Part shown: positions 30,716 to 59,787 of the stretch, one piece after another
Numbering within the stretch: the stretch's first letter is position 1
How the letters are laid out: each line of letters opens with the position of its first letter
Assembly (NCBI GenBank): GCA_044892525.1
Contig: CM097886.1
Location: forward strand, 120,962,001-121,026,000
Reading direction: 5' to 3'
Length of the DNA stretch: 64,000 nucleotides
Source of the DNA: Schmidtea polychroa
Taxonomy: Eukaryota
The notes under the pieces: generated by a model
The model's database searches: none
What the model was told of the DNA's origin: nothing
The model's input: only the letters and a program-made list of their open reading frames with translations
Made by a program: the position numbers and the translations under genes

Positions 30716-30855
30716 GTAAGGCCTTCTATGGCACTCGCGAACCCGCATTGTGAAGTCTACCGGGAGTAGTTCTAACATAGGAGCTCACCTGCTGGTAGAT
30801 TCCAACCTATGTGTACGATACCAGCGTGTTACACCATCACGGGTACACATAAGGG
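30716..30855 (+). ncRNA. Structured RNA motif M1 (unknown family)
   Basis: GTAAGGCCTTCTA; CTACCGG-GAG-TAGT-hairpin-GCTC-ACCTG-CTGGTAG; TATGTGTAC/GTACACATA stem enclosing GATACCAGC and a hairpin. Confidence 0.7.
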
Positions 30856-31059
30856 AGACGATTGCAATATCATGAAGGTTGTTTAGGGCATGTTATCTCT
30901 TTCCCCTTTGTAACCAACATAAGTTTAAACTGCATACAAATCAAGCCAACAGGGAATGATTTTATATTTCATTTAAGATGGATTTAAATTATGAAATGAG
31001 TTTCATATTTTGATTTTCGATTTAATTCAAAAGGATCGACCTGGGAGTAGTTAAATTAA

Positions 31060-31350
31060 GGGTTTACAAATTAAGAATCACTAGATTTAATTAAGTTCGC
31101 ATATTTAACTTAACGGTTAATAAATTCAGGTTTAATAAATTAGGAGTTGATAACTTTAGAAATAATAAATTGAAATTTTATAAATTTGTACATTTAAATT
31201 AAAGATTAATGAGTTCAGGTCTATTAAATTAAAATTTAATAAATTTAGAATTGATAAATTAAAATTTTATTATTTAAATTAAGTTGGGATCTTTCAATTA
31301 CGGACCATCAAATCAAGGTTCAATAAATTAAAAGTTGACAGGATAGGAAA
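31060..31350. repeat. Degenerate 15-bp tandem array
   Basis: Units such as TAATAAATTCAGGTT, TAATAAATTAGGAGT, TAATAAATTGAAATT. Confidence 0.65.
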
Positions 31351-31904
31351 ATTAACGATTTAAATTATATTTGTTTGGTCAGACCATTTCACATTTTTGT
31401 TTGTCAGATTGAATTATAATTAAAAAATGTTAATGCAATTTGGCCTAAATCGGACAAAATTTCTTAGCTACCGAACCTTGTTAGCTGGAAACTGAGTGTA
31501 ATACTCGAGTCGTTACTTAAGTTCCTTACCTTTCCTCCGTAGATAATGGTAGTAAGTGGTGTCATCGACATTGGTCCAGGTAATAAAATTTATATCTCCT
31601 TTTTGGTTTATTTTTAGTGATGGTGATTTTCCCTTATTTTCCAATTATTCTGACTGCAAATCTTCGGTATATGATGAAATTCGGATTATGGTAATATTAA
31701 ACTCTCGAAATCGGATTTTTTCGTTTCTCAAATACCTGATTTGTTCTAATAAACAAAATGTTGTTATTATTTTTATTTCGTAACAATGCAATGTAACAAG
31801 GTATCAAAGATGGTTGAATTTATTATATAGCGGCGAACCCTCGAGCTATTTCCTGGTTATCGCTTGACTCCTGTTGGGTAGTCGTGATTTTAGTTGTTGA
31901 TATT

Positions 31905-32037
31905 CCCGTACGTACACCGTGATGATGGTTCACGTTGGTACACAGGTCGGAACTGATGGACAGGTCAGCATCTGCGTTAAGACTACTATCCACCAAATTC
32001 ACAGTGCAGGTTCCTGGTTGCCGATAGAAGGCCTTAC
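31905..32037 (-). ncRNA. Structured RNA motif M2
   Basis: GTAAGGCCTTCTATCGGC; TGGTGGA-TAG-TAGT-hairpin-GCTG-ACCTG-TCCATCA; GTAC-CAAC-GTGA..TCAC-GG-TGTAC. Confidence 0.7.
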
Positions 32038-32291
32038 CCCTTAATATTCGCCTCTGGTCCGGCGAGACGGTCATTATACCTACATATTCAGTCATGTCAC
32101 ATCCCTCATGTTTACACGCGCAATTGACGTTCTTTATTACCTTATTTATTCACTTGCTTTTTTGCCCAATTCGATTTTCGATTCCTAATTTAATTAACCA
32201 AAATCTCAGATAATTCAGACGCCCTCCTTATCACAGACCTCGAAAGTTATAAAATGAATAGCAATTTAACATCAAAGATTTATTGACAATA

Positions 32292-32790: not shown

Positions 32791-32917
32791 ATAAAACATA
32801 TTTAGACACCGAAAAACAGACTCAAATCAAGCAATGGAATCATTCCTCACATATATTGTCTCAGAGTTTCCAAATAGTGTGGTCCCGTAGAGTTCATATT
32901 CATTGGGAATATATGCA

Positions 32918-33603
32918 TCAGATAGTAGCGTCTTCGGCTAGTAATGCATCAATATCGGCCTGAATCCAGGGGTCGTTTGGAGCCGAGGTTTTACCCGACG
33001 AAATTATCCGGAATTGATCAGGAGTGGCGACTGGAAGAATAACAGAGATGTTCGCGAACAAAGATGTCTCGAGCGCTGTACGTTTAGCTCTTTCGCTTCT
33101 TTACGCCACTCTGTGATGTTGTACTGACATTTATCGAGACGATGTTAGGCGCAGGATTGACGATACCTGGTCCTGCCGAGGGAATCAATACCGTGTTCCC
33201 ACTGAGAATCGGGTCGACAATTTTAGTCAGCTCAGGCCCATGACTGGTGCAAGACGATGCCACTGGTACGCTTACTTCATCGGTATTATGATGTAAGGGG
33301 AATATATTAACCCCATCTTTGATTGGGGACTCTCGTATTCTCCACTGCATCTCCGATTCGGTATTGCGCTTTTATCGTGAGCCTCTGGCATCTACTCTCT
33401 TCTAGGAAACTGTCACGGCAGTGCTCCAATCTCAGAACTTTCATCATATCCTCTTTCATTTGTGGTGGGAGAACCACGTGTGTTCGAGCGTTTCAATACG
33501 CTGTTTCAGAACCCCTGTGTCTGAAGTTTTCGAATATCGGCATTCTTGTCGGAGCACGAGAAACACATCTCGGCTCCTTTTGTGGTAGACTGGGCTCACA
33601 CAT
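32918..33603 (-). pseudogene. ORF-X copy C (several frameshifts)
   Basis: Acceptor TTTTTCTTCAG then MCEPSLP; CFSCSDKNADI; WFSPPQMKE..KVLRLEHCRDSFLEESRCQRLTIKAQ; ALETSLFA; DIDALLAE. Confidence 0.85.
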
Positions 33604-35487
33604 TATTCTGAAGAAAAACGATGAACTTATTTCCGCCAAAATACTCCCCTCCTTCCCATCTACTCTTTCCAATCTCTCACGAATACCCCATCCCCTTCAA
33701 TCATCATCGGCAATTCCCCAATTCCCTTTACAAAGTGTCCTTGACGGATAAGTTTAATTTAAACATTTAATTAACGGTTGAGGGTTCATGGATCGATAAA
33801 TGAAGTAATTATTATTATTGTATACTAAAATTTAAGAATTCCTAGTTTCCGAAATTACTTAACGTCATATTGTTGAGTTAGAGTTATATATATTTCACTT
33901 TATGATTTCGAATTTACCGTATTGTATTCTTACAAATTTTTTAAGGTAAGTACTATTTAACGTGATAATTAAATAAGTCTATAAGTAACAATTTTTGCGT
34001 TGGAATTTGGCGAGTTTTACTATATCCTTATTTGACTAAACGACAAGATGAGAAAAACTCTAGAAAACTTTCCACTTGGGGGAGTCGAGTGTATCGACTT
34101 TTTACTATAGGCTTATGTCCCTATTACTTTATTATCAAACTACATGTACTTAATTGTCTGTTTGCATTTACTACTTGGAGATTATGTAATCATTGGATGT
34201 TTGTTTATTAGTTTCAAACATCATTAATTAGATTTAGTGCTGTGAATTCGGTTCCTGTTTTATGTAAATAGACGGTTTGGTGAAATCTCCAAATTTTTTA
34301 TAAACATTAATTCGCCATTGATAAACAAAGCTGGGATCGCCGAGATATCTGTAAGCTCTACCCTACCATGGCGATTGTTTATGATTCGTCGACGTCGATG
34401 ATTGTGACTTAATGTTACGTGAATATTGGAAGATTTTATCCCACGTATGATATTAGTATTATTTCTATCAGATTGTCTTAGATTGAATTCGAATCTCTAT
34501 GTCGCTTACTGGACTACCCCTGGTAACTACTTACAAAGGTGTTCATCGTGTTCAAGAGTTCCATTTCCAGCTACTTATCTAAAAACGGAAGAAATTCTGC
34601 GAATGATCAATTTTCCACTATAGTTGTACGAAAATCCAAACTCTCATCATCTATATTCTCAGGACATTCTATCATTCTACGCATTTCTCTACTCGCCCCT
34701 CGAAAATGGCATTTGCTACTCTCGTTATCATATAAAATGTGAAACTGGCATCATTGATCCATCCACCCTGCATGGTACACTCAAAAAGCCACCGGTGCAA
34801 GCACTGACTACCTTCGAACGACCTTACAACACGGTTCGATCATTATAACAATTAAATAATTATAATAATAAAAATTATCTATTCTGCAAAATTAGAATAA
34901 TACTAAAAATCTATTTGGTGAATTAAAATAATAATCATAAAATTCCCACCGATGACCATATCACCTGATCCCGTGCATGAATGTTTCATTCATTGGATTC
35001 TTCCCGATTTCGAAACTTTCATAACCAATTTTCCGGAATTTCACATGGATAATTTCTATTTTCGGCGATTTGCATGCCATATTGAAAATCATAATAATGC
35101 TCTCTATCCATGCACGGCTCCTCAGGCAATATCGTCCGCAGGGCCCATCATGAAGAGAGAAAATGAAATTCAATGAAAATCTTTTAATTAAGTAAATGTT
35201 TTAATTCTGATTTATACAATAATTTATCATAAGACTGCTTAATAAAAATTTCATAACGATTAATATCAAATAAACTAAATAAAATAAACAGTAAATTACT
35301 TTTCCGTATATAAGTCTATGAATCGAAACAAGATTTCTACTGATTGTTCTCTCGAAATGGTCCCTCGAAATATGATTAATTAATCTTAATAGTATTTATT
35401 TCTGTATGAATCTGTCGTCAGGTCCTTCGGAGTTTTGAATGCTAAGTTGTCCTGTCGTATAAATTTAAAAGTTGCCTAACTAACTTA

Positions 35488-35900
35488 GCGGCCGCTATAT
35501 ATACTAATTTTTATCCAATCAGGACGCGATTGGTGTGTTTCTTATTATTTTCTTTGGTTTTTATAGCTTATTTGTCAATTTTAATTTATTCTTTTATTTA
35601 TTTTTCTATTCATTCTGAATTTTGACGTATTCCTTCGGCTGATTCTTTCCTAATTGGTTAATTTTAGTCCTTATTTTGCGTTTTAGATTGTTTCTTACTT
35701 ATTTCTTTTAATTTTTATTAATATTCTTATTTTATTCGGTTATTTATTTTATTAATTTTGTCGGTTTATTCAGTCTGTGTTGTTGGTTATTTATTATGGG
35801 ATTCTCATTTGTCGTTTTTTATTATTTTTTCAATTATTTAATTTCCCTTTTTCTTTTATTTAACTCGCCCATTTTTCCTGTTGTTGTAATTTAATTTCAG
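35488..35900 (-). promoter_or_regulatory. LTR-like promoter module P2
   Basis: Minus strand: A-rich tract, ATTGG at 35519-35515, TATATATA at 35503-35496, GCGGCCGCTAAGTTAGTTA (near-identical to P1). Confidence 0.55.
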
Positions 35901-37443: not shown

Positions 37444-37511
37444 CCCTTTGGACGCGTCAAGCGACTATAGTCGCCCGAATTTAATTGAATAAATCTACCA
37501 CGTTGAAAGGG
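37444..37511. mobile_element. 68-bp piggyBac-type MITE
   Basis: TTAA|CCCTTTGGACG...CGTTGAAAGGG|TTAA. Confidence 0.7.
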
Positions 37512-38821: not shown

Positions 38822-38955
38822 CATAAACCCTTCTAACGACACTCAAGAACCCGTATGAAACTTAAAGTGGAGTAGTTATAAGATAGTAGCTCATCTGCCC
38901 TTTATTTTTCACTGACAGTGGGCAGTACCAACATGACGGTTGTCATGTGTACGTA
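38822..38955 (+). ncRNA. Structured RNA motif M3 (degenerate)
   Basis: CCTTCTA; TAAAG-TG-GAG-TAGT..GCTC-ATCTG-CC-CTTTA; CAGTACCAAC-ATGAC-GGTT-GTCAT. Confidence 0.6.
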
Positions 38956-39290
38956 CATTAGTCATTATTTTTATAAATCATGAGCGTTGAACTGAGTCAA
39001 CAATCAACTATGAGTTTTAGTTTTGTTTACTCAAACGCCAACAGAAATATTGATGTAAACTATTTCATGATAAAAATTTCTTTATAAATGTTGTTCTCCT
39101 ATAATTCGCTGAAAAACACTAAATAATTTTATGTTTGGAAATAAGAAAAAGCCGAAACAAATCAAGAATTTAGAAATTATTTATTCACAGTATGATTATT
39201 TCAACAGTTGTCTTTAAACAAGATTTTGTGATTGTAAATCTGTATCGGCGACAATGTATAATTCTCCGTCAACCTCATCAATTACCAGTA

Positions 39291-39895
39291 CAGTAAAGTC
39301 CCGTTTACCCGAAATCTGACTAACCGGAATTCGGTTTATCCTGACAAAATTTTAATTTTTTAAGTTACATTTTAACTCAGCCCATTAAATGAGTACTTTC
39401 CAAAATTGTAAATATAAATATTGATTAAAAAAGTAATATCTCTCAGCCCCATAGATATCGAAAAAGAAAAGGGCACTATTACAATTGAAGAGAAATTATA
39501 TACAGTTAATCGGCTAGAAAATAAAGAATCAATAAACATTTTGTGTCAAGAGTATCAACAATAGACAATTTACGAAAGAATCGAAGGTTCATGAGGCCAA
39601 ATATTCTGAACCAGATATTGCTTTATTTATAAGATTTATGTAGAAAAGATTATGTGGAGTTCCGATAGAGTGGTGTAAGCATTTAACCTTCACAATGAGT
39701 TATTGATAGGTGATTTTTTCTACAAGTTGGTGATTAGATAGGTTGAAATAGGCATGATGTAATTAATGATCGTATTTTTGGTAAAAACTTTCAGCAGATG
39801 AAAATTCAGCAAGTCTATTTGCTAACAAGTGGAAATGTGTAGCGTGTTAGATATTATAATATGGATGAAACAGAAGTTAATTTTAAAATGCTGTT
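39291..39895 (+). mobile_element. pogo/Tigger-like transposon remnant
   Basis: TA|CAGTAAAGTCCCGTTTACCCG TIR, a degraded CENP-B-like HTH and the YNMDET motif at ~39855. Confidence 0.7.
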
Positions 39896-40255
39896 AACTA
39901 TAAATTAGTACCAACTTCAAAGCACAATCTTTCCGGATAGAAATCAAATAAAGAAAAAATAACCGTATGTTTATGTTCCAATGCGTCTGGAAAACATAAA
40001 CTGCCACCGTTTTCCATTGAAAAATATGTGAGATCACGTTTCAAAAATATTAATGTGAAAAGTATTCCTGTTAATTTCGTTCTCAAAAATCAAAAAATCG
40101 AGCCACTCGTAATTCAAAACGAGTTCGAATTACACGCTCTAGTCGCCGAAATTGAGCTGGAGATTAGGATATTAGGAATTTTAGTAATGTTTTTCTGTAA
40201 CAAGATGTTAGTAAAGAGTTCACAGTACCAGAAAGTAGAAAGGAACGATTCTAAC

Positions 40256-40380
40256 GTAAGTCCTTCTATCGGCCGTATGGGACCCGCGAGAAATATTATA
40301 TGTGAGTAGTGTTAAGACAGACGCTCATCTGCCCTTTAATTTTTCGCCGACGTTGAACAGTACCATTCTGATCGTCGTCG
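40256..40380 (+). ncRNA. Structured RNA motif M4 (degenerate)
   Basis: GTAAGTCCTTCTATCGGC; GAGTAGT..GCTCATCTGCCCTTTA; GCCGAC; CAGTACCA. Confidence 0.6.
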
Positions 40381-41608
40381 GGGGCTCTCTATTCGGTATA
40401 GAAAAAAACATGTACGCTGATAAACTGAACCAAATTTTCAATCTTTGCTAGACCAAGCGCCAACACTGTTCATAGAAGACGTGTGTAGAGCTTTGTGCTA
40501 GTTGGAACAAACAATATAGTATCTGATGAAATGAATATTTAAAATAATTACGAAATAAAAAATGGACCTAAAAACAGGAGGAAAATACTCAGTAACACAA
40601 CTTTATAAACCTAACCTATATAATTTAAAAAGAATGTTGAATTTGTTAATAAAATTATAGTTAATTTATAATTTATTAATATATAATCTTTAATAATCCC
40701 AATTCTATTGTTATTATTAAATTTTTATTGCTATATAATAAATCATAATTAAGGAAAATAACCTAAATAACCAAGAAATCTATACAAATCAAATCTATAA
40801 CTAATCAAAGCTAGACGTTATTATAATTGTACTTATCCCAAATTGTGGAAGCATTAATCAGATGAATGATTTGTTATTTGTTAAACTATAAAATCAGTCA
40901 ATTAACAGCTTATTAAAAGTTTTAGTTTATTAAATTTATTTGTGTTTTAGTTATGACAGCACAATCAAATGTAAAAATATTGGTGTTGCATTACGATATA
41001 ATCCGAAGAAAACTAAAAGGTCAACATTAACAAATCATTGGAAGAATTATGTGATGCATTTCATGTGAATAAAGATTATGCCTCTGATATAGGGAGAATT
41101 TTACCTATAAGTACGCTAATGGACCATGTACAAAAAGAATGAAGATATTGTTGAAGGTGCTTTCTATTTGTAGTAGCATATCATGAACGTCTGAAGAAGC
41201 AAAAATTCCAATAGTGTTTACAGATAAATTGATATTTGTCATCAAAGGTACATACCAGTTGTTAACTGAAATATCGCCAGTGTAAATATCGACATTGATT
41301 AGAATTTATTTAAATTACATTATTTCAATTATTAACACCTCGGATGATGCTTCAAGAAAGAAGCAGCCATTAATCAATAGATGCAATCCTCCGAATTTAA
41401 TGATAATTATACGAATTCCCAAACTTGTTAATACATTTGTCTTTGATTAATTATGAAATATCTGTCCAATTGTAATGCACAAAGGAATATAACTACTTAT
41501 TTTAGAAAGACTGTAGATGATTCATTACTTTATTATTTTATTATCCTTTATTACAGTTTTTACATCTTATGATATTAATTGCCTTTTAAAATCCAAAGTA
41601 TATGTTAA

Positions 41609-41680
41609 CACGTGGAACGTCGTGCGAATCGTATACGATGCACAATACATTTATTTTTTACCGTTGCAGCGTTCAACGTG
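41609..41680. mobile_element. 72-bp piggyBac-type MITE
   Basis: TTAA|CACGTGGAACG...CGTTCAACGTG|TTAA. Confidence 0.7.
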
Positions 41681-41874: not shown

Positions 41875-42439
41875 TTAATAAATATGTTTTCGATTTTTGA
41901 AATAGATAATAAGAAATTAAGTATCACTTTTTTTAATCCAACTACCTCGAGATCTACCCATGGCCAAATAATTTAGATCTTCAATTAATATAACTTCACT
42001 TTATTTCACTTGAATTCAAAGTCGAAACTAAAATATTCAATCAAATTTATGTTTCTCGATTTAATTATATACCATAAATCTTTATTTCATATATTTATTA
42101 ATATATAATTATTATAAATCAATTAATATATAAATATTTACATATACTTCAGAGACAAAAAGAAAAAACTCCTAAAGAAATTTTACTTCACCAGTTCCTA
42201 CCTACTTAAAACATATTTTTTTAATTTGCACAATTTCTTTTTCAGAATTTAAGATTTTTAGTTTGTAGTGGACGATCGACCGAAATTCGTGTCGCGATCG
42301 CCTGGTTGGGCAGGCCTGCTATAGATGAATGGACGTCCAAAAGAAATCGCCGATATATGAATGTCGCCGCATATAACAAGCGTGAAATCTGGAATCTAGG
42401 CCTCGCAAGAAATATTGAGAAATTATAAAAATTTAATTT

Positions 42440-43678
42440 TAATTATGACGATACTGTATGCGTAACTACAGATGGCGCATCTGTAATGAAAAATTATGGT
42501 CACACTACCTATTATTCATCAGTTGTGTTTTACCCACAGTATCCAGTTCTGTAAGGAAAAAATGAAAATCATGGTGATTTGGCAATTGAAGAAAACAATG
42601 ATTCTTCTGATGACGATGATAGAATAGAAAATGATGAAAGTTTAGGTGTCTTATACTATCATGCCCGAAAATGATACAGAAGATACATATATTAATGTAT
42701 TATTATGTAAAATTAGAAAAATCGTAAAAATGTTTAGAAAAACTGCTGCAAAAAATGAAGAAATACTTCAAAAGCATGTTATTGAGGAATTTGGCTATGA
42801 AAAACCATTAATTATGTTTTCTAGACCACGTTGAAATAGCTTATTGGAAAAGTTAGAGAGATTTTACGAAATGAAAAATTGTATAAGAAAAAATTTAATT
42901 GATTTAGAAAGTGATATTAATTTGTCAGGAAGTGACATAAATTTATTACAAATTATAATATGTTTATTACTTCATATAAAAATTGCAGTAGAAACAATTT
43001 GCTGCAATGATGCCACTTTATATACAGCAGATATAACTAAGAAATTTATGTTGGATGAATTATCAATGCAAGATAGTTTTCTAAGTAACAACCTAAAAGA
43101 ACTAATTAAAAGGATTAATGAGAGGAAAACTAAATATTCCGATGTATTGCAGATTTTACGCAACATGAAAGAATGTTTTGATGACAAAAAAATAATTCAT
43201 TTAACAAGACATCAAGAACTGAACTAAATTAATCATGAAGATGGTAGAGAGCGCAAGGATATACCACTAAAACACTTATTGGCGAAGAATCAGAAGAAAT
43301 GGGAAGCGTAAACGAATGAAATGTCTTATAAAAATTATGGCAAGGAACAATCTTCAAAAGAAAAACTATTTTCAACTATTAAAGAAAAATCGCTACTAGC
43401 AGAAAATTCTGGTAGTATTACGGATATCGATATAACATGTAATGCGGCAAAAACACGTAAAAGCAGAAATGATACCCCTTGCATTAAATGATATGCTAGA
43501 GACATATTTTGATGAAGCTTATAATCATCTTTTATCGATAAAACCTACATCAGTATGCTCAGAAAGACCATTTTCATCAGTCGGACTGCTTAGTTCTAAA
43601 ATAAGTTTATTGATAGATGAAACTCTTGATAACTTATGTTTTCTTAAAGCTTTTTTTAATAAAGAAAAATTAAATTGA
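42440..43678 (+). pseudogene. Degraded hAT transposase related to 27010-28911
   Basis: VTTDGASVM, KIRKIVKMFRK, PRWNSL-like, IKIAVETICC and SIKPTSVCSERPFS motifs with many frameshifts. Confidence 0.85.
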
Positions 43679-43693
43679 TTAAATATTTTAAAC

Positions 43694-44172
43694 GGTGACA
43701 GGTCACTTAATCCCCAGTCACTTAATCCCCATCACTTAATCCCCGTCAATTAATCCCCGAGTCACTTAATCCCTGTCAATTAATCCCCGAGTCACTTAAT
43801 CCCCGAGTCACTTAATCCCCGAGTCACTTAATCCCCTTTATAAATTCCTTTATAAAGCATTGTGTAATGTAGTGCTGTCAATTTCAGTTAGTACGAATAT
43901 TTTTGTAATATTATTACCGTTATTGAAATATTATTGAAAATATTATTTTGAAATATTATTACCGTTAGAAAAATGCATCTAGAGTTCATAATAAGTAGTA
44001 AAGGAAGATCTATGCTAGTTCATGAGGGATATGAATTCTGGCTCAAGAAGAAGGCGCTAAACGGAAACATGAATTTTTGGGATTAAGTGTCGGGGATTAA
44101 GTGACTCGGGGATTAATGGACGGGGATTAAGTGACGGGGATTAAGTGACTGGGGATTAAGTGACTGGTAATC
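43694..44172 (+). mobile_element. Non-autonomous Mutator (MULE) element with a FLYWCH fragment
   Basis: Perfect 9-bp TSD ATTTTAAAC. Arms made of tandem GTCACTTAATCCCC units. Internal MHLEFIISSKGRSMLVHEGYEFW (FLYWCH N-terminal half) at ~43974. Confidence 0.85.
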
Positions 44173-44329
44173 ATTTTAAACAGTATAAATTTTGTTAGAT
44201 TTTTTACCATTAAATACTATAAATTATTACATATTTAGTTTATTGAATATTTTTCGAATTCATGTGGTATATAGAAACCGTGTTATACGAAACCTTGAAA
44301 TATTATAAATAAAGTCAATGTGTACCGTG

Positions 44330-47510: not shown

Positions 47511-50389
47511 CATGGGTGGGCAAGTGCGGCCTTAAAGGCCGCATGCGGCCTAAAAAAACAAAATTGCGGCCTTCAGAACGATTAGAAATGTATAATGTTT
47601 GCGGCCATCAAATCCTTTATAAGGGATTTTGTATATTATCGTTAATTAAAATCGTTCATTAAACTTTTATCAGTTGGTCATCTCATTCATTTCAAAGTTA
47701 TCACCATTCAATAGTAGCCTACACGCCTTCAAAGACAATATATTCTTTGCTATCATAACGAATTGGTCTCTGTGACACTCATAAGAAATCATGGGTATAA
47801 ATTACATTACATTCGTGAGCAAGAAGAATTAGTTGTTTGCCATATAGAGTAATTGACAAAAGCAGTTGGGCTAGTCAATAAGGAAAGGCAATACCCGTAC
47901 ACACATATACTAGTGTGGTTAAATATCTATACGTGGGTGTGAAAACAGGAGAGTGTGAAGTATTGTTATTCGTTGTCAGATTGCGTGGTAGCTTATCTAT
48001 TATTGGTTAACACTCAGTCGCGTGATAACAGCTGCCATTTTTCATTTCAAATCATTATTTGTTGAGTGGAGCTGCCGAGCATACGTAAGTTCTATTGAGA
48101 CGTATTGTCTTGTCTATTGGGATTACAGCGTTCTATCATAATGACAGGCAGATCATGCTTGCTATTGACTTCTCATGTACTCTTATTCAGTATAATCAAT
48201 TGATTAACAAATAATTAATTGAGTATTGACAATTTGTTATATTCCTTTGCAGCTCATCATCCTTTTTTCTTTCCATGCCGAAACCACCTTTATGTAAGAA
48301 ATCCAGAACATTGGAGAGTGAGAATCGACAATTCAGTGAAGAATGGAAGTTGGATTTCTACATGTCTAACAATGACAGCACAATGATGTGTCTGAGATGC
48401 AAACAACAAATAAAAACATTGAAACGATCTAATGCGAAACAACATTATGAGAGCTGCAAGTCGTATATGAAGTACATGACACTAGAAGGTTAGGCAGTGG
48501 TTGCTATTGTATGGGCATAAATAACTTGTAAATGTTTTATATTTTTCCGCACAAAGGTGAAGCAAGGAAGCAAGCCTACGATGCACTGAATAGTAATCAT
48601 GCAAAAGAAGCGGGATTGTTTTCCACGTTCAAGTCAAGTGGTCACAATCCAGCGGTGGAGGCAACTTACCGTGTTGCATTCCAACTTGGTGCTGCAGGGA
48701 AGCCTTATTCTGATGTGGAATTATTTAAAACATGTCTTCTGGAAGTGGTGCAGTGCCTTGAACCATCTCAAATTCAAAAGTACAAGGAATTGCCTTTGTC
48801 TCGACGGACGATAGTAAGACGTCAAGAAGAGCTAGCAGTTGATATAAGACGACAACTTGATGAGGTCTGTAAACAACCAGATGTACTCTTCTCTATGGCA
48901 CTCGACGAATCGTGTGATGCTTCCGACACCTCACAATTACTTATCTATATCCGTGCTACAACGTCGTCATTCCAAGTCCATGAAGAATTATTGGCTGTGA
49001 TTAGTATGAAGTCAACCACACGTGCACCTGACATTCTTGCCCAATTGAATAAAGTATGCGAAGAAAAACAATTGGACCTGGCCAAGCTGGTTTCCGTGTG
49101 CACTGATGGCGCACCCGCTATGATTGGCAGCACTGGAGGATTTGTCGCACTTCTGACAAAGCAGCTACGATCTCAATGGCCACATTTACCAACCTTAATG
49201 TCACTACATTGCATCATTCATCAAGAGGCGCTGTGTGCAAAGTCTGTAACATTAGACAATATTATGGAGGAAACAATCTCTATTGTGAATTTCATACGTT
49301 CCCGTGCACTTAACCACAGACAATTCCGGCAGCTACTTGTGGATGATAATTCTACTGATAAGGAAGATGTTCTCTACTATTCGAATGTTCGTTGGTTATC
49401 CAAGGGAGCTGTCATCAAGAGAGTCTATGAACTGCAAAACAATATAAAGGAATTCTACTCTTCGAAAGGCTTGGAATGTAAGTTGAATAATCCTTCCTTC
49501 TGTCAGAAGCTTGCGTTCCTTGCAGATCTTCTGGATCATTTGAATGGCTTGAACACTCAACTTCAAGGTAAAGGCCAAAATGTTTGTGACCTGTGGCGAT
49601 TCATCAAAGTGTTCCTGCGTAAATTGAAACTCTTCCATGGAAAGTTTACCCAGAAACAACTGACAGAACACTTTCCCCTACTTCGGGATTTCGCCATCGC
49701 CCATCCCACAGAAGAGGTGACCTACGAGGAGTTCACTGATGTTTTCAGTACACTAATTCAAGAGTTTGAAATGCGATTTCATGACTTTCGAAACCATGAA
49801 AATGACTTGCGCCTCGTGTCTGAGCCGCACTTGTTACAGCCAGAAACAGTGTCTGAGATGTATCAAATGGAGATTTTGGAACTGTGTGAGGATGCAAATT
49901 CTCGAAGCGTTCTGTCTCGTGCACCTGTCGATTTGGTTTCATTCTGGCATGGTGCCTTTCAGTATCCAAATCTACGCAATCATGCTCGCCGAATTTTGAC
50001 CTGTTTTGGCAGTACATATATATGTGAAAGCACATTTTCACACATGAATTACATTAAAAATTGTCAACGTATTGCTTTAACTGACGGTCATTTAGAGGAC
50101 CAGTTGCTCTTAAAGACTACCTGCTTCGTACCATGTTATTATGCTCTCTCCACTAACATACAAGCTCACAAGAGCCATTAATGTACATTTTCAGTATCCA
50201 CTTGGTCTGTTTTCTCTCCTATAACAGAATAATTCTGACTTGTTTTGATGTGTTATTGTAGGCAGTTGTTGAATTTCCTTGCGATATGAATAACAAACTA
50301 AAAAGTACATTATACAATTGTTTTGCGGCCTTGGAAGTTTTTAATGAACGTAAATTGGCCTTCAGGTGTAAAAAGTTTGCCCACCCCTG
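47511..50389 (+). mobile_element. Full-length Buster/Charlie-type hAT element
   Basis: TIR CA(T/G)GGGTGGGCAA, perfect TSD TCTTAAGC. Confidence 0.93.
48275..50181 (+). CDS. Intact spliced hAT transposase (GTF2IRD2/EPM2AIP1-like); intron 48489-48556
   Basis: Exons 48275-48488 and 48557-50181 join in frame (LEG|EARKQ) across a GT...AG intron, giving 612 aa. Motifs ALDESCD, CTDGAPAM, HCIIHQEALC, VRWLSKG and FGSTYICESTFS. Confidence 0.88.
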
Positions 50390-51191: not shown

Positions 51192-53749
51192 CAGTGTTTC
51201 CCAACGTGGGGCCCACGCCCCACTTGGGGGCAATTTCGATTTCCAGGGGGGCAATTTCAATTTTAGGGAATATATGTTAATTTTAGGTTTGAGTTACGTT
51301 TTCTTTATTTTCTTCAGTAAAATTCGAGAATAGTCTACGAAATTTTAATATCCAATTCTTATTTAGTTTTATGTCTTTTTATTATAGATCGAAAAAATAT
51401 TCTTTTCATTATATTTTTAGTAAGAAAATTTTTGGGTTTTATCTAAGCAGAAGATCATCTTTTTCTTTATCTTCTGTTTATAATTAAACAGTATGGTAAG
51501 CATAAAAACAATAGATAATGAGTAAAATCGTGTTAAAAGATTCAATTCTTTATTTTTCATCCACAAAAAAACTATGGCAACTTTTTTTGATTTTTTCTTC
51601 AAATCTTATCCATAAGTTTTTTAAATAATGAAAAATAATAGTAAGAAATTTTAGTTTCTTAATTGTTTAGTTATGTTATATTTAAAATAATAGTAAGAAA
51701 TTTTAGTTTCTTAATTGTTTAGTTATGTTCAAATTTTCATTATTTTTTTGAATATTTTAAAAACTTTTGATCATTGTCTTTTAAAAAATATAAAATTTTT
51801 TTTAGGGGTAACAGAAAAATGAAGGAAAAAAATTATAATGATAGAACAAGAAAAGTGCGCTTGACAAAAAAAAATTCTTAAGTACTCACTAGAATATTTG
51901 AAATTTGGTTTTATACCTGCAACTTATGATGAAAGATTACCTTTGTGTCTGCTTTGTAAGCAATGTCTTACAAATGAATCAATGAAACGAGGTCGCCTCG
52001 AAGCACACTTTTTGGCCAAGCATAGTTCTTATAAAACATCTGATTTAGCTTTCTTTCAATCCTTAAAGAAACAATTCGAACAGAGAACAACTTTGACATC
52101 TTTGTTTACCCTTCATAGTTCTATAAGTGATCGTACACTTGAAGCTAGTTTTGAAATTTCAAAGATGATTGCAAAATCTGGAAAAAATCATACAGTAGGA
52201 GAAAGTCTGGTCAAGCCTTCGATTTCTGCATTTCTTAGGATAGTTATGGGTAAAGATGACGCGGATGTTAAGGGAATGCCGTTAAGTAATAATACTGTCA
52301 GTAGAAGAATTGATGAAATGAGTAAAGATGTGGAGAATCAACTTGTTGAGAAACTAAAAACTTTAAATTTCTCTTTACAAATGGATGAATCAACTTTTAG
52401 AGACAGCGAATCGATATTAATTGCTTACGTAAGATACATTGATAAAGAGGAATTTTTTGAAGAATTTTTATTCAGCAGATCGCTGGAAAGCACAACAACT
52501 GCGAAAGATATTTTAAATCATCTAAAAGATTATCTTACAATTAATAATATACCTCTAAGTAATATTACTTCCTGTGCTTCAAATGGCTGCCTTAAATTAC
52601 TTAAAGACGAAAATCCAGAAATGATGATTATTCATTGTGTCATTCACAGAGAAAATTTGGTAGCCAAGAAGATTTCTCCTAAGTTAAATGAAGTTTTACA
52701 GTCAGTTATAAAATGTATTAATTTCATTAAAGCCAATTCAAAGAATGAACGTCTTTTTAAGTTATTCTGTAAAGAACAAAATGAAGAATATATTCGACTT
52801 TTATTACATACTGAAGTAAGATGGCTTTCAAAAGGAAATTGTTTGGCTAGATTCATGGAGCTTTTTGATAGTCTTAGTGTCTTTCTTTCCGACAAGATTG
52901 AGATGAAATTCTTAATGACGAAAGATGGTAAGGTTTATTTGAGCTATTTAACAGATATCTTTGAGAAGTTTAATACTCTCAACAATCAACTTCAAGGGAA
53001 AAACAGAAATCTTATTGAAGTTAAAGCAAAAATTTTTAGTTTTATTTCGCTTTGAAAAATAAGTATTAAATCACTCTCAAAGAAAAACTTTGAAAGTTTT
53101 AATTGGCTTCAGAAATGTGAAGTAAGTGAATCAGCCAAGTCAGTGATTCTTGACCATTTAAAATTACTTATAGAAGACTTAGAAGAGAGGTTTTCAGACT
53201 TAAAAGAAATTATCTTCCCAAATTGGATAACACAGCCGATGCTTATAGATTTGGCAGAATTCGAAAATTTCGAATATATAGAAGAAATCGCTGAGATTCA
53301 AAACGATGAATCAATAAAAAATCTGTTTGGTTTGAAAGGGATAATGGCATGGCTTAGCGATGAGATGAATAAAAAATATCCAATGTCAACATCTTATGCA
53401 AGAAAACTATTATTACCATTTCCCACTACCTATTTATCTGAATGTGGATTTAGTGTAATTAATGATTTACTTATCAAGAAGAGAAATCGTTTAGATATCA
53501 TCGAAAGAGGAGATCTAAGGCTTAAACTTACCAACTTCGAACCTAATATTAAATCACTCTGCAGTAACCATCAGAGTCAATTGTCTCATTGAATAAAAAA
53601 ATTAATCTTTATCTATTAATTACGTATATCAATAAAATAGTTGGAAATTTTTTAAAAACTGTAAAATGTTTTGCATAGGGGGGGGGGGGGCAAAAGAAAA
53701 AAAAATTCAGCTAGGGGGGACATGAGCTAAAAAAGGTTGGGAAACACTG
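51192..53749 (+). mobile_element. Buster/Charlie-type hAT element (ZBED5/SCAND3-like)
   Basis: TIR CAGTGTTTCCCAAC, perfect TSD TTCTAAAT. Confidence 0.93.
51898..53592 (+). pseudogene. hAT transposase with a frameshift and a deletion of the DGA motif region
   Basis: LQMDEST, HCVIHRENL, EVRWLSKG and FPTTYLSECGFS present; the expected DGAPAM motif is missing. Confidence 0.88.
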
Positions 53750-54464: not shown

Positions 54465-54606
54465 GACTTAAGTCCTTCTATCGGCAGTCGAAAAGTGGAA
54501 AAGTCGAGTTAGGGTGAAGGAGTAGTCCTAAGGTAGGGGCTCACCTGCTTCATAGTAGTTCACCGGCATGGCACAGTACCAACATGATGTAAATCATCTG
54601 TCATGT
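54465..54606 (+). ncRNA. Structured RNA motif M5
   Basis: TAAGTCCTTCTATCGGC; TGAAG-GAG-TAGT-hairpin-GCTC-ACCTG-CTTCA; CATGGC..GTCATG stem enclosing ACAGTACCAAC and ATGAT-GTAA-ATCAT. Confidence 0.72.
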
Positions 54607-54607
54607 T

Positions 54608-55737
54608 GTGGAAATAATCGTGTGGGTTTTTGGTCAGCGGTCCGCAGAATATGCTGTAAGGTCATTCTTTTCGGACTATCATCCTCTAGTAATTAGTAAC
54701 CTCTTGTTGACCCTGCCGACTACCCAACAGTATAATGATATCCATAATGATGCCAATACTGTATCACCTCTTCATCCCGTGTCCTGCTTAGGCGATCATC
54801 CCTCTTCACCTCAAGTGGCCGCTCCAGGCAAAACTGAAAAATCGCAGAACAAGTTCTCTTCAAATTTCCAATTCCGTTGCGAAATGAGGAAACTCAACAA
54901 CTGGAAAAAATTCAAGGTAGACCCGAGTCATAAACACCGCGTTCGGGACCTTAACACCGCTCTTTCTCTTTAAACAGACCTGCCTCAGGATCCGGCTCTC
55001 TTGTCAATGCTCCTACGATATCGTGCAACGACACTGTGTATCTTACACCTGCTCTTTCACCCCCTCTTCTGTCTGCAACCATTACGGCTAGTGCAGCCAC
55101 CGACGTCATCTCACCCCAAATTGTTCAAAAGCTCATCCATACTCCAATTTTATCTCCTAACACAGATACAACTAACAACAAGCATATAACACCACAAACT
55201 CAAACTTCACAGACCCCCTCCTGAACACAGACCTCTTCCCAGAACTCCGACATCACTCATGACAACAATACACCACCGCGCAAAGTGACCATGGCCAACT
55301 TCTTTCTAACAATCAAACGACACAACCAAGCCACAGTCAACTTATATTCGTCGCCAACTGACAGGACAAGCAATAACACCCCGCCCCAATTTCATCAACC
55401 CAAACACTAACATGATGGCTCGGACCACCTCTTTTCTCTACCGTGACACAAATCGAAATCACCTGATAGCTCTATGTCCACTGTGAACCCTCAACAAATA
55501 AAGAAACTTCATCACAAGTCAAAAAACGCCCATAGCCGCAGATCATACTTTAACGATAAGCGTAATATCAATAACAGAATCGACAAAATGGAAAACGCCC
55601 TACATAAAATTGCCCACCATCTCACTAAACTGGCCTCTGACAAATATGGCATGGACGCCACGCGCCTGTCCCCAACGCACCCCAGCCTCTCCACATCTTA
55701 CCAGTTCGTTAATGAAGACTCACGCGTCGACTGCTAG
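54608..55737 (+). pseudogene. Degenerate Pro/Ser/Thr-rich ORF of unknown origin downstream of M5
   Basis: Locally GC-richer chain of short same-strand ORFs; no diagnostic motif recognised. Confidence 0.3.
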
Positions 55738-55899
55738 CAGTGCAGGCCCAAAAAGGGAAATGAAAGATTCACCATGAACCACGTCAAATTCAAAGACCTT
55801 TATAATCATGTTGACCACTTTACAACATGGCCATGGAAGAGATGATTTTACAACAATCAGGAAGAATTGTAGAATTAGTCAATAAGGTAGCGGAGCTCG

Positions 55900-56110
55900 A
55901 TCGAGACAGCAACGGCTGCGAAGGTTTTATACATCTGACAGTTAACCACTCTATACATTTTGTTGACCCAATAACTTTTGCGACAACTAACCACGTGGAA
56001 AGTATGTGGCAAAAAAATGAGACAAGCACATAAGTCTCGCTATGGTACTCATAGGACAATGCTGACTTCTTATTTAGTCGAATTCATGTGGCTTCAGAGA
56101 TTTGAAATTT
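55900..56110 (+). pseudogene. Merlin (IS1016/ISXO2-like) transposase C-terminal fragment
   Basis: [29 protein letters not shown], then after a frameshift [21 protein letters not shown]. Confidence 0.85.
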
Positions 56111-57849
56111 ATTGAATTTGTAAAGGACGTTTATGATATATAAATATGATTATTACATTAATTCTTATTATTTTTTATATAATATATTTATTTAAATATT
56201 ATTTAATTAAATAATAAACGGGGGGATTAAAGTGCATAAGTACCGCGATTGGCTTCCTCTCAATAAAAAACTTACTAAATATGAACTAAAGAAACGCTTT
56301 AGATGTCAAATTTTTCTGTGTCATAAAGATTCAACCCCCTCTTATGGTTGTAATATATGTAAAAAACCTAACTGTTGAAGTCATTTATGTTTGCTATCAT
56401 TGTATCATAATGTATGTAATCCGTTTTTTGCAATATGTTTGTATTTAGAAAATAAATTGTTATCTTTAATATTTTAATTAGGATAAATTTCGGCTAATAT
56501 TTATGGGTGTTAAAATTACCCCAAACTTACTTAATGTATAGAAAGAGAACTCTGGATTAGTGTTAAAAAGATGTTGAACAATTAACATACCGTATACTCC
56601 TTTATATTTATTATGCAACCCAAAAAACAACTAACAAATTATATAATTATACATAATCTTGTGTAAATATATTGTAAGCGATAATATAAATATACAAAAT
56701 TGTGCAATTACTTTGAGAATCTTTGGATGCGCATCAATCGCCAATTGAAGATCCAGATCAAGACAAGTGGCCAGATGTTTCCGTCATCCTTGCGATAATT
56801 TGAAATTCGGTCAGAAGTAATATAATGTTTGCCGTATCTATTTTGCTTATTTCCGAGCAATATCGTGTGGTCTAAATGACTAATTTAAAAAACTGTTATT
56901 CCATAATTCCTTGTTTCATATAATTAAAATCGCTAAAGCTACATAATACCCATATTTATTTAACATAAAATCCGATTACTGCTCTAAGTAAAAGCAATTT
57001 ATAAAAATGTATTTAAAATGATTGATTAATTCAATGAGCTTTGCTAGATATGATTTTTCATTGGCAAAGCTATTATTAGTAATCTATAAAATGAATTATG
57101 TGTCAAAGAATTTTCTAGAAATAAACAATAAATTACTTTGACAAAATCTAAATTAATTTTTAGCAAAATCCAAACAAATTACTAATAAGTTGCAAACTTT
57201 GTATACATAAATTCAAAAGAGTTATTTATTGCTCTCATTTAAACAATTTCATAGTTGTTAAATGAGTATGATTTTCAAACTTTGCTTAATTTAATAAAGG
57301 TGTTTTCAATATATAATTTGCAAAAAAATATTATAAACAATTTTTTGATATTTTTAAATTGTGCATTAAACTATTTATAATATATCAATAAGAATTCTAA
57401 TGTTCCTGAAAATGAATTACTTTATTTTTAAAAATTCTTAAGTTATACATGATTGAACTCATTTTTCTTTCTTTATTTATTATTAAATTAGAATATGGTC
57501 CAAAATTATATTTAATGCAGATTTTTTAGCTTGAAATTTGCAAAAATGTATTAAAAGAAAATAAAATAGAGACAAAACAAAAATCAGAATGTAAACTTTT
57601 TCTTTTTAAATGATATTTGACTTTACAAACAACACGCAATAAATTCTACTGTGTCTTATTATATGTGCTAGGGGCTCCGGGCAAAAGACCGACAGACAAA
57701 AAGCCAGTGTGAACAAAAGCAAACAAAAAGAACTTGTTTTATTTTAATAACAATTAAATAAATTGTTATTTGGATTAAGTTATTATTTATTTCATGTATT
57801 ATAATTTATAAGTTTTTTCTTGTAAAGAATTAGACGATTGTAAACATTA

Positions 57850-58240
57850 GACGATTTACACATTCCAGGTGATTATGTGAATGGCCGATTAAGGAACATA
57901 AATCGAAGAGAAGTGAGGGACCAACTACTTTTTCAGTCTCAGCTTTGGTCTGTATATGACAACGAAATAAACGGCATACCAAGAACTCAAAACAAAGTAG
58001 AGGGGGTTGGCACATAATATGGCAAATATTGGTTGGAAAAATCCAAGAACAAATCCGCACCTCAGCTGAAATGGAATCCATAATTCTTGTGCAACTATGC
58101 CCTAAACGCTAAAAACAATGTGTAGAGAAATACCAAAGATTGGCAACGATTGAAAATAATCGACATCAATGAACAACGTTAGAATTTTTTAGATTCTCAA
58201 CGTTGCACTGGTGACTATGTATGTCTATCAAATATGAAAG
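57850..58240 (+). pseudogene. MULE transposase C-terminal fragment
   Basis: QLWSVYDNEINGIPRTQNKVEG-WH matches the RTNNxxEGWH signature. Confidence 0.75.
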
Positions 58241-59644
58241 CAAAGTCGGGTTAGTGAATTATTTATTGTGAAATACGAAATATTACCAATACAGATTCCG
58301 TTAAGAAAATGATTCTACTGAAAAGATGGTGCGTGTTGTATAGGTGTTATATATTGTATATGCGAGTTATGTTGCTTGTAAAACCTTGAACGTTTTTGTT
58401 ATTTTACTGTTCTGGTTTAAAAATTAATAAGGATTTTCCCTTTATAGTTTACAGTAGAAATGGTAAAATATTTTGGCGGCCACTACTGATTTTGGGTCGC
58501 TATTTATATTATTTTCATGGGCGTTAACATAAGGAAATTTATTTATTTATTTAAAGCGTATGTCTTTGTTAAAATTTAATCATGTTTTTCTTTATATATT
58601 TATTTAGCTTTATATTAAAAATGTTCTTTGTTAAAATATAAAATTATGCTTTTATATATTTATTTAACTTTAAAAATATTTCCATTATTCTTTGTTAAAA
58701 AAATGTTATTCTTTCATTATTTGCTTAAGCCGAGCTGTCGCAAAATTCGTTTACTCGGGCCGAACTGTTATAATTTCTTCAAGCGTTGTTTTATTATATT
58801 TATTGCTCTAACGGAGCTGTTGTTCGTTTACAAATATCATTCAATAGAAATTATTAAAATTATTTAACGAGATTTAATTTGAAAATTATTCTATTTTTTT
58901 TGACAAAATTTAATTTGTAAATTTATTTTTATATTTTGAAAAGAAAATTTTCCCTTTAAATTATATAATTAAGTGTACATAACACAAAATAAATAAACCA
59001 TCAATGCATACGATATAAAAATGTTAATAATAAATTGTTCATCACATATTATATACAAGTTAACACGAGTTATCAAATTGTTTATTGAATAGATTTGATA
59101 TCGGAATTGAATTATATGGATTATATTGTATTGTCTGGTTTTGTCATTTTTCTTTATCTGATTTACGCATAAATATTAACTCTGTATCTATTAGCTCCTG
59201 TCCTATAATATTTTGTGAGTTTAAAATTTTCGATGACCCTGCCTCTGTCATCCAACAATAGTAAATAAATAAATTTAAAACATTTAAATGATGATGATAT
59301 TCAGAGTTTCAGTCTAAAATGGGAAACAATGGATGTTTATTTGCAAGTCGATTAAAATTGTGATCAATAATTAATATTGTGTATAATAAAATTTAAATGA
59401 ATTATATAAGTAGTGGGAAAGCGGTCCACTAAACCAGCGGCCCTCTGGGACAAAGAAATACCCCACCCCCCGGCATTAAAAAATTTTTTCAAAGTCAAAT
59501 TTTAAACAAAGGCATATGCTGGGGCACTACTCGGTTGACCACCCTTAATTCAACTTTTAGCCTAGGAGATGAATGCCCATTCCGATTATGCTTGTCATTA
59601 GTTTGCCAACCCCGAGCAGGACCCGTACATAACCTACTCTCCAA

Positions 59645-59787
59645 CATAGCACCCGTGAATTACTTCACGTTGGAACCGTGCTATGCCGGCGAGACGCCAG
59701 TAAGCAGGTGAGCCACTCCCTTCGGACTACTCCTTACTGAGGCCTCGACTTCCTACCCTTGACTGCCGATAGAAGGACTTACGTCTC
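59645..59787 (-). ncRNA. Structured RNA motif M6 (best preserved)
   Basis: GAGACGTAAGTCCTTCTATCGGC; CAGTAAG-GAG-TAG-TCC-GAAG-GGA-GTGG-CTC-ACCTG-CTTACTG; CATAGCAC-GGTTCCAAC-GTGAA-GTAA-TTCAC-GG-GTGCTATG. Confidence 0.75.

What the first reader, a model, noticed from the sequence alone, without database searches (positions are those of the whole stretch)
30716..59787. Six copies of a ~140-nt RNA motif with strongly covarying stems
Copies: M1 30716+, M2 32037-, M3 38822+, M4 40256+, M5 54465+, M6 59787-. Conserved sequence blocks are AAG(T/G)CCTTCTA (degenerate in M3), (G/T)AGTAGT, GCT(C/G)A(C/T)CTG and TACCA-like. Stem sequences change while pairing is kept: CTACCGG/CTGGTAG (M1), TGGTGGA/TCCATCA (M2), TGAAG/CTTCA (M5), CAGTAAG/CTTACTG (M6). 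The distal stem also covaries: TATGTGTAC/GTACACATA (M1), CATGGC/GTCATG (M5), CATAGCAC/GTGCTATG (M6), capped by GTAA tetraloop hairpins in M5 and M6. This is the signature of selection on RNA structure. I could not match it to hammerhead, HDV, twister, snRNA or intron families by eye.
Basis: seen in the sequence. Interest (0 to 1): 0.88.

Follow-up and report, generated by a model that had tools for sequence, protein, structure and literature searches.

The report
New structured RNA beside repeated gene
Seven copies of a ~145-base RNA fold that has kept its base pairs while its sequence changed lie in this window, three of them just downstream of the same small protein gene. It matches no catalogued RNA family and is probably a recognition signal of a repeated, selfish-looking gene unit.

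Summary
A covariance model built from them finds a seventh, diverged copy at 23827-23969(-). Across 26 base pairs, 88-89% of cells are paired and 13-15 pairs show changes on both sides. Sliding the partners gives only 36-46% paired, and no shuffle reaches the observed values. G:U pairs outnumber A:C 22 to 3, and every copy folds better on the stated strand, so the constraint acts on RNA.

The new finding is context. A ~250-aa ORF family (helical hairpin plus a basic helix) sits 0.26-0.9 kb upstream of three motif copies on the same strand. Its synonymous sites are saturated, yet the coding signal and the stop position are kept. Spacers and flanks are not alignable.

Nothing known matches: no Rfam hit even at E<=10, no hammerhead core, Sm site, snoRNA boxes, tRNA head or bracovirus integration motif. 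The protein has no Pfam, PDB or viral structural relative.

My best reading (about 40%) is a cis-acting protein-recognition RNA of a repeated, TE-like ORF+RNA unit. It works like Rev/RRE, Gag/psi or a LINE 3'UTR signal but belongs to none of them. A new ribozyme, an intron-associated element, a host gene-cluster 3'UTR element and a free-standing small RNA remain open.

The parts
30715..30859 (+). RNA motif copy M1 (intact fold)
   Evidence: CM R1 131.8 bits; all stems paired; 257 nt downstream of ORF copy c1
31901..32038 (-). RNA motif copy M2 (intact central arm, shortened distal stem)
   Evidence: CM 117 bits; about 0.9 kb downstream of ORF copy cM2 on the same strand
38822..38965 (+). RNA motif copy M3 (5' leader degenerate, stems mostly kept); no ORF upstream
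   Evidence: CM 132 bits; tblastn and HMM find no ORF relative nearby
40255..40400 (+). RNA motif copy M4 (main stem decayed, outer extension helix of 9 bp kept); no ORF upstream
   Evidence: CM 126 bits; folds; lies about 175 nt after a truncated pogo-type DDE_1 remnant
54467..54616 (+). RNA motif copy M5 (intact fold, first base of the GU changed); no ORF upstream
   Evidence: CM 129 bits
59636..59783 (-). RNA motif copy M6 (intact fold, best-folding copy)
   Evidence: CM 134.6 bits; z-score -3.4; 289 nt downstream of the intact ORF c6
23827..23969 (-). RNA motif copy M7, new here: 5' block and 3' arm kept with new compensatory pairs, central hairpin replaced
   Evidence: CM 31 bits, E 3e-7; sequence; fold
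60075..60824 (-). ORF copy c6, intact, 249 aa: helical hairpin (residues 13-88) plus basic helix (177-193)
29659..30459 (+). ORF copy c1, broken (two in-frame stops), upstream of M1
32933..33631 (-). ORF copy cM2, broken (at least three frameshifts), upstream of M2
3837..4688 (+). ORF copy c0, open (283 aa from a TTG), with no motif downstream
   Evidence: the CM finds nothing downstream
24973..25021 (.). 49-nt conserved element, one of an inverted pair, about 1.85 kb upstream of ORF c1 once the hAT insertion is discounted
35471..35519 (.). Partner of the 49-nt element (86% complementary), about 1.84 kb upstream of ORF cM2

Best explanation
The motif is a cis-acting, protein-recognised structured RNA. 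It belongs to a repeated, long-lived, selfish-looking gene unit. Shown: it lies on the same strand as a ~250-aa ORF, a few hundred bases downstream of it. The ORF protein has a helical-hairpin (oligomerisation-type) domain and a lysine/arginine-rich helix. The RNA has a conserved ~15-nt 5' leader that none of the supported helices includes. A long 5' arm follows: a closing helix, an extension helix, a covarying stem, two conserved internal loops, and a hairpin with two invariant U:G pairs and a conserved 6-nt loop. Then comes a 3' arm: a covarying distal stem, a conserved 7-8-nt bulge (UACCAA type) and a covarying apical hairpin. Inferred: the conserved loops and leader are contact sites for a protein. 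That protein could be the unit's own basic protein, the host or element machinery that exports, packages or copies the transcript, or both. The stems only need to hold these sites in place, which would explain why they covary freely. Copies without an ORF are either remnants or hitch-hikers that keep only the signal.
For: RNA-level selection on this strand. Linkage to the ORF: three of four ORF copies have a motif 257, 289 and about 900 nt downstream on the same strand. My estimate of the chance of this is under 1e-3. The ORF is real and old. Codon position 3 identity is 0.29-0.40 against 0.58-0.75 at positions 1 and 2. The stop position is shared by c1 and c6. Spacers and flanks are unalignable, so only the ORF and the motif are held by selection. 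Protein architecture: AF2 gives a helical hairpin with pLDDT above 90 and a basic helix, with the rest disordered. Database relatives have an arginine-rich run and a PPPY motif; one gives a weak Pfam REV-family match over its arginine run. The family is dispersed. All 16-plus database relatives are chimeric gene models fused to unrelated host domains or to a hAT transposase. ORF-less copies M5 and M3 still keep the fold.
Against: There is no evidence of binding, transcript boundaries or mobility. Only seven copies from one window are available, and they fall into about three related pairs. No reverse transcriptase, integrase or transposase belongs to the unit, and no terminal repeats, tails or target-site duplications were found, so calling it a mobile element is an inference. 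Eight family members in 64 kb could equally be a local host gene cluster. The conserved leader starts with a 5'-splice-site-like GUAAG in four copies, which this model does not explain.
Confidence: 0.4

Rival explanations
1. It is a 3'UTR regulatory element (localisation, stability or translation control) of a host multigene family that grew by local duplication. The ORF-less copies would be remains of dead paralogues. Nothing here would be mobile.
For: Eight family members at synonymous saturation lie within 64 kb, in both orientations. Two ORFs are intact. M1/M2 and M5/M6 are convergent pairs. A 49-nt element sits at the same distance (about 1.85 kb) upstream of both c1 and cM2, as a promoter would. 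Three hAT copies sit less than 1 kb upstream of family members, as expected if hAT favours promoters of active genes.
Against: Database relatives are fused to about 15 unrelated host genes, which suggests dispersal. ORF-less M5 keeps a perfect fold with no coding remnant nearby. The family is seen only in one old annotation set and has no named orthologues.
Confidence: 0.2
2. It is a self-cleaving ribozyme of a new class that processes the unit's transcript downstream of the ORF, as ribozymes of several retroelements and of delta-like agents do.
For: It shows the typical signature of compact size, invariant unpaired nucleotides at junctions and freely covarying stems. It is associated with a repeated unit. 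The arrangement of an ORF for a coiled-coil basic protein followed by a structured RNA recalls the delta antigen and its ribozyme. Conservation starts abruptly at the 5' edge.
Against: No Rfam ribozyme model matches at E<=10. There is no hammerhead core. A scan for conserved complementary diagonals found no crossing helices of the HDV type. No rod-like complementarity to the ORF region was found. Two simple hairpin arms are less knotted than most ribozyme cores.
Confidence: 0.15
3. It is a free-standing small non-coding RNA gene family, or a SINE-like head, that only happens to lie near the ORF.
For: Similarity between copies ends within about 10 nt of both motif edges. Four of the seven copies lack the ORF.
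Against: No tRNA-like head was found. There is no Sm site, snoRNA box, or consistent T-run terminator, no conserved upstream promoter block and no Rfam hit. The same-strand ORF linkage in three cases is unlikely by chance.
Confidence: 0.1
4. It is the structured 5' part of a spliceosomal intron (an introner-like or 3'UTR intron). The leader would be the 5' splice site and the UACCAA(C) bulge a branch site.
For: GUAAG(U/G) starts four copies. The UACCAAC block resembles a branch-point sequence. AG dinucleotides follow 36-65 nt later.
Against: The GU is absent in M3, M5 and M7, although M5 is otherwise intact. No AG sits at a conserved column. The motif follows the ORF's conserved stop by 257-289 nt in M1 and M6 (about 900 nt in M2), so no copy can be shown to interrupt a reading frame. 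The strongly conserved non-splice blocks are unexplained.
Confidence: 0.08
5. It is a DNA-level site: a recombinase or transposase binding site with inverted repeats, such as the host integration motif of bracovirus segments.
For: TAGT and ACCA tetramers lie 42-51 nt apart in five copies, like the junction spacing reported for those motifs (PMC8549517).
Against: The defining 8-nt and 5-nt inverted repeats given in PMC8460044 are absent from all seven copies. G:U exceeds A:C by 22 to 3, with two invariant U:G pairs, so the constraint is not strand-symmetric. The paired strands are nested hairpins, not arms flanking a spacer.
Confidence: 0.02

Closest known systems
Rev/RRE-type modules of complex retroviruses (also Rex/RxRE, Rec/RcRE) and the CTE of simple retroviruses
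   Same: A small protein with a helical-hairpin oligomerisation domain, an arginine/lysine-rich helix and a leucine-rich acidic C-terminus is encoded next to a structured RNA on the same transcript. The RNA has conserved internal loops and variable stems. A splice-donor-like sequence sits at the RNA element.
   Different: There is no LTR, gag-pol-env or reverse transcriptase in the unit. There is no sequence or fold match to Rev, only one weak Pfam REV-family match in a relative. At 145 nt with two arms the RNA is much smaller than an RRE. Binding and export are untested.
3'UTR recognition structures of stringent-type LINEs and their SINE partners, and the R2 3'UTR
   Same: A conserved fold with little primary conservation lies downstream of an ORF1-like coiled-coil basic protein. 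Truncated or ORF-less copies keep the RNA.
   Different: The motif is not at a recognisable 3' end. There is no tail repeat, poly(A) or target-site duplication. No RT ORF occurs anywhere in the units.
Ribozymes of mobile elements and delta-like agents (HDV-like, hammerhead, twister)
   Same: Compact size, covarying stems, invariant junction nucleotides and a repeated genomic context. The order of ORF then RNA recalls the delta antigen and the antigenomic ribozyme.
   Different: No covariance-model hit, no hammerhead core, no double-pseudoknot topology and no rod-like genome.
Bracovirus host integration motif
   Same: About 110-145 nt, with two short conserved tetramers about 50 nt apart.
   Different: The defining inverted repeats are absent, and the constraint is on one RNA strand rather than on duplex DNA.

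Membership tests
HDV-like ribozymes | Match to the HDV / CPEB3 / drz-Agam covariance models | tested here: not met
   Rfam 15: no hit at gathering score or at E<=10 on the motif
HDV-like ribozymes | Nested double pseudoknot (P1 and P2 strands crossing P3 and P4) | tested here: inconclusive
   The supported helices are nested hairpins. The scan for conserved complementary diagonals found no crossing helix with covariation. Seven sequences give little power.
Hammerhead ribozyme | CUGANGA and GAAA core around a three-way junction | tested here: not met
   No CUGANGA in any copy; no Rfam hit
Twister, twister-sister, pistol, hatchet, hairpin, VS | Match to the family covariance model | tested here: not met
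Any self-cleaving ribozyme | Site-specific self-scission | not testable with these tools
   Needs RNA end mapping or biochemistry
Sm-class snRNA / spliced-leader RNA | Sm site; conserved leader exon upstream of the donor | tested here: not met
   No Sm site inside the structure; sequence upstream of GUAAG is not conserved
tRNA-derived SINE / Pol III small RNA gene | tRNA-like head and a T-run terminator | tested here: not met
   ARAGORN finds none; T-runs are absent after four of seven copies
H/ACA or C/D snoRNA | H box in the hinge plus ACA 3 nt from the end; or C/D boxes | tested here: not met
   No consistent boxes; no Rfam hit
Bracovirus host integration motif | Paired 8-nt and 5-nt reverse-complement repeats bordering a ~50-nt spacer (PMC8460044) | tested here: not met
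   Absent from all copies and 100-nt flanks
Spliceosomal intron / introner | GU...AG ends at fixed positions, interrupting an exon | tested here: not met
   GU in four of seven copies; no conserved AG column; where an ORF is upstream, the motif lies after its stop
Rev/RRE-type export module | Oligomerising helical hairpin plus arginine-rich RNA-binding helix in the protein | tested here: met
   AF2 model and alignment. This is architecture only; no sequence or fold homology to Rev.
Rev/RRE-type export module | Retroviral genome context (LTRs, RT) | tested here: not met
   No RT, LTR or integrase in or beside the units
Rev/RRE-type export module | Specific binding of the protein to the RNA, and export dependence | not testable with these tools
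   -
LINE/SINE 3' recognition element | Position at the extreme 3' end, followed by a tail and a target-site duplication; partner RT | tested here: not met
   No common tail after the motif; no RT in the window

The most novel reading that the evidence does not exclude
The ORF and RNA together form a previously undescribed kind of minimal selfish unit in an animal genome. A Rev-like or delta-antigen-like basic coiled-coil protein would act with its cognate structured RNA, which is either a new self-cleaving ribozyme class or a new export/packaging signal. The unit would persist with no polymerase or transposase of its own.
Probability: 0.2. Interest if true: 0.85.

Novelty: new variant of a known kind. 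Interest (0 to 1): 0.64.

Why it matters
Structured RNAs with clear compensatory evolution and no Rfam family are rare in animal genomes. Here the RNA comes with a conserved partner ORF whose layout (oligomerising hairpin plus basic helix) is that of viral RNA-binding adaptors. Neutral sites are saturated, yet both the RNA and the ORF are kept. If the pair is a protein-RNA recognition module of a polymerase-less repeated unit, it would be a new example of how selfish or fast-evolving genes secure handling of their own transcript. If the RNA cleaves itself, it would be a new ribozyme class. Either way the covariance model gives a direct handle for a genome-wide census.

Tried and rejected
Rfam at gathering and permissive thresholds found nothing on the motif. 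Exact pattern scans gave 0 hits in viral contigs and 3 chance hits lacking the other blocks in metagenome contigs.

The window's genome could not be reached. Exact look-ups of four window proteins and one relative found no contig. The best relative of the hAT transposase is only 51% identical. No further copies could therefore be fetched.

For the ORF: the word-based protein search found nothing. The exhaustive HMMER and profile searches found only chimeric, unnamed gene models. Pfam, PHROGs, PDB sequence search, Foldseek against PDB and BFVD, and the viral-contig scan gave nothing significant.

A full-text search for the conserved blocks found nothing relevant. The bracovirus integration motif was considered because of the TAGT..ACCA spacing and rejected.

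The idea that the ORF is a passenger gene of hAT transposons was rejected for c1. That hAT has its own subterminal repeats and ends about 385 nt before the ORF.

I could not find the rest of the pogo transposase after M4, which would have defined an insertion boundary. A by-eye similarity of a short open frame upstream of M7 to the C-termini of database relatives was not supported by tblastn. A weak ORF-like stretch about 1 kb downstream of M5 is not significant. Searches for terminal repeats around the c0 and c6 units gave only AT-rich noise.

The closing helix of the 5' arm and two alternative pairings of the leader rest on invariant columns and cannot be tested with seven sequences.

The profiles (covariance model R1 and one HMM) were used only for searching.


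Full report
OBSERVATION. The window is AT-rich (24-42% G+C) and looks like repeat-rich animal DNA. It holds five hAT transposase genes, a Pao-type gag and a pogo remnant. MAFFT plus RNAalifold recover the main stem, an inner hairpin and an apical 3' hairpin.

COVARIATION. I added the top of the distal stem and counted 26 pairs on the unfitted alignment A2. 89.3% of cells pair, 13 pairs change on both sides, and the covariation score is 0.526. With partners slid by 1-3 columns the score is 0.08-0.14 and 36-46% of cells pair. No shuffle out of 500 reaches any observed measure.

A SEVENTH COPY. The covariance model R1 scores the six copies at 117-135 bits. It also finds a seventh at 23827-23969(-) (31 bits, E 3e-7). 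In that copy the 5' block and the 3' arm are kept. The distal stem is an entirely new 8-bp sequence and the apical stem has changed on both sides. The central hairpin has been replaced by a different one. With this copy included, 15 pairs change on both sides.

RNA OR DNA, AND WHICH STRAND. Within the 26 pairs there are 22 G:U cells and 3 A:C cells. Two U:G pairs of the inner hairpin are invariant or nearly so. All seven copies fold more stably as written than as the reverse complement. The constraint is therefore on an RNA of the stated strand, not on a DNA palindrome.

ANATOMY.
- Leader: a conserved ~15-nt 5' leader, starting GUAAG(U/G) in four copies and followed by a CCUUCUAU-type block that is identical in five copies and differs at one base in M3 and in M7. 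None of the supported helices includes it.
- 5' arm: a short closing helix pairs the UCGG(C) at the end of the leader with a CCG(R) after the arm. It is seen in six of seven copies but rests on invariant bases.
- 5' arm, continued: an extension helix pairs a GA-rich segment with a UUC-containing hinge. It is present in every copy and differs on both sides between M5 and M6.
- 5' arm, continued: the strongly covarying main stem of 5-7 bp follows, then an invariant AG:CU step with a U / CAC-type internal loop. The arm ends in a 6-bp hairpin whose middle pairs covary, capped by a 6-nt loop of the form AA...A.
- 3' arm: a covarying distal stem, a conserved 7-8-nt 5'-side bulge of the UACCAA type, and a covarying apical hairpin (GUAA loop in M5 and M6).
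- Decay: M4's main stem and M7's central hairpin have decayed. M3's leader is degenerate.
- Alternative pairings of the leader with either strand at the base of the inner hairpin exist. They involve only invariant columns, so I leave them as leads.

CONTEXT, THE MAIN NEW RESULT. An all-against-all comparison of open frames shows a protein family at 3837-4688(+), 29659-30459(+), about 32933-33631(-) and 60075-60824(-).
- The last three lie upstream of M1, M2 and M6 on the same strand, with gaps of 257, about 900 and 289 nt. By my estimate the chance of three of four ORFs having a motif within 1 kb downstream on the same strand is below 1e-3.
- Two copies are open. One has two in-frame stops. 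One has at least three frameshifts.
- Between copies, codon position 3 is 29-40% identical, about what unrelated AT-rich sequence would give. Positions 1 and 2 are 58-75% identical. The stop codon of c1 and c6 falls at the same place.
- The ORF-to-motif spacer and all flanks are unalignable. Two things alone have been held by selection over a long time: the protein and the RNA.
- M3, M4 and M5 have no ORF remnant. The short open frame upstream of M7 is not demonstrably related. The first ORF copy has no motif.
- The M1 and M2 units face each other. Each has the same 49-nt element about 1.85 kb upstream of its ORF, once a hAT insertion with its own ends is discounted. This suggests the unit is at least 3 kb long.

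THE PROTEIN.
- There is no Pfam or PHROGs family, no PDB sequence relative and no word-based homologue.
- An exhaustive profile search finds 16 relatives, the best at E 4.5e-15. A later profile search adds three more.
- All are unnamed entries of one old annotation batch. All those scanned or carrying precomputed Pfam domains are chimeric, with the domain joined to a transporter, a phosphatase, ankyrin repeats, a subtilase, a hAT transposase and others.
- That pattern is what gene predictors produce around dispersed repeats.
- The relatives carry an arginine-rich run and a PPPY motif after the conserved domain.
- AlphaFold gives a confident helical hairpin (residues 13-88, pLDDT above 90), a disordered middle and a basic helix (177-193).
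- Foldseek finds only generic coiled coils in the PDB and nothing significant among viral models. No viral contig encodes a relative.

WHAT IT IS NOT.
- Rfam 15 gives no hit on the motif at gathering score or at E<=10, even when single copies are searched.
- There is no hammerhead core, Sm site, C/D or H/ACA boxes, or consistent T-run, and no tRNA-like head.
- The TAGT-to-ACCA spacing of 42-51 nt recalled the bracovirus host integration motif (PMC8549517). The defining 8-nt and 5-nt inverted repeats (PMC8460044) are absent, and the strand asymmetry argues against a DNA site.
- The leader looks like a 5' splice site in four copies. M5 is otherwise intact yet lacks the GU, and no AG sits at a fixed column. 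In all three ORF-linked copies the motif follows the ORF's end.

MECHANISM.
- Shown: selection on an RNA fold of this strand; linkage to, and same-strand orientation with, a conserved ORF for a helical-hairpin plus basic-helix protein; persistence of both beyond synonymous saturation.
- Inferred: the RNA is part of the ORF's transcript, and its invariant leader, loops and bulge are protein contact sites held in place by interchangeable stems. The unit's own basic protein is the natural candidate ligand, as with Rev and its response element, Gag and psi, or delta antigen and its RNA. Export, packaging or copying machinery could equally read it.
- I put this at about 0.4.
- Whether the unit is mobile is open. 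It has no polymerase, transposase, terminal repeats or target-site duplications that I could find. Eight members in 64 kb would also fit a host gene cluster with a 3'UTR control element (0.2).
- A new ribozyme (0.15), a free-standing small RNA (0.1), an intron-linked element (0.08) and a DNA site (0.02) follow.

LIMITS. The source genome is not in any collection I could query, so all inference rests on seven copies in one window. No transcript data were available. Broken ORFs were searched piece by piece, and only counts of breaks are given.

Noticed in passing
window 8367-11972 and 18121-22708: A large inverted duplication. Open frames in the two stretches are 93-100% identical in mirror order. 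It brackets the 12-17 kb region.
   Followed up: no
window 12024-13010 and 15883-16872; ORF 13495-16446(-): Two ~1-kb direct repeats whose open frames are 100% identical flank a 983-aa ORF. That ORF joins a proteasome-subunit domain, a ubiquitin domain and a Pao-type gag domain (DUF1759). A 181-aa proteasome-domain ORF at 12051-12596(-) repeats its first 181 residues exactly. This may be host gene fragments captured in or fused to an LTR element.
   Followed up: no
window 508-2971, 26464-29275, 42225-45119, 48532-50181, 51865-53589: Five hAT transposase genes of at least three lineages (DUF4371 type, BED-finger type). Two have long open frames. Three lie less than 1 kb upstream of, and on the same strand as, a member of the ORF/motif family (c0, c1, M5), which is more than I would expect by chance.
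   Followed up: partly
window 43686-43836 and 44079-44180: Two arrays of a 14-16-nt unit (GTCACTTAATCCCCGA type) in inverted orientation, 89% complementary over 102 nt, inside the decayed hAT region. They may be subterminal transposase-binding repeats or a foldback.
   Followed up: no
window 31103-31282: An AT-rich tandem array (15-nt unit, about 11 copies; 89-nt higher-order unit) midway between the convergent M1 and M2. A similar AT-rich stretch lies downstream of M6 (59262-59412).
   Followed up: no
window 39418-40079: A truncated pogo/Tigger-type transposase remnant (start of a DDE_1 domain) between M3 and M4. The rest of the domain was not found downstream.
   Followed up: partly
window 55815-56112: Open frames downstream of M5 look by eye like the C-terminus of an IS1595/Merlin-type transposase. 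One of the two frames (55823-56083, minus strand, overlapping the stretch) was not scanned; 55447-55774 gave no Pfam hit.
   Followed up: no
window 25013-25091 and 31495-31520: A 19-26-nt block (TTAAGTAACGAC... type) is duplicated next to the left 49-nt element. It recurs inverted about 380 nt beyond the end of M2 and might mark an end of the unit.
   Followed up: partly
proteins P0001-P0016, P0100-P0102: Every database relative of the ORF is an unnamed UniParc entry. Every one scanned or carrying precomputed Pfam domains has the domain fused to an unrelated host domain. Two of these are a tyrosine phosphatase and ankyrin repeats.
   Followed up: partly
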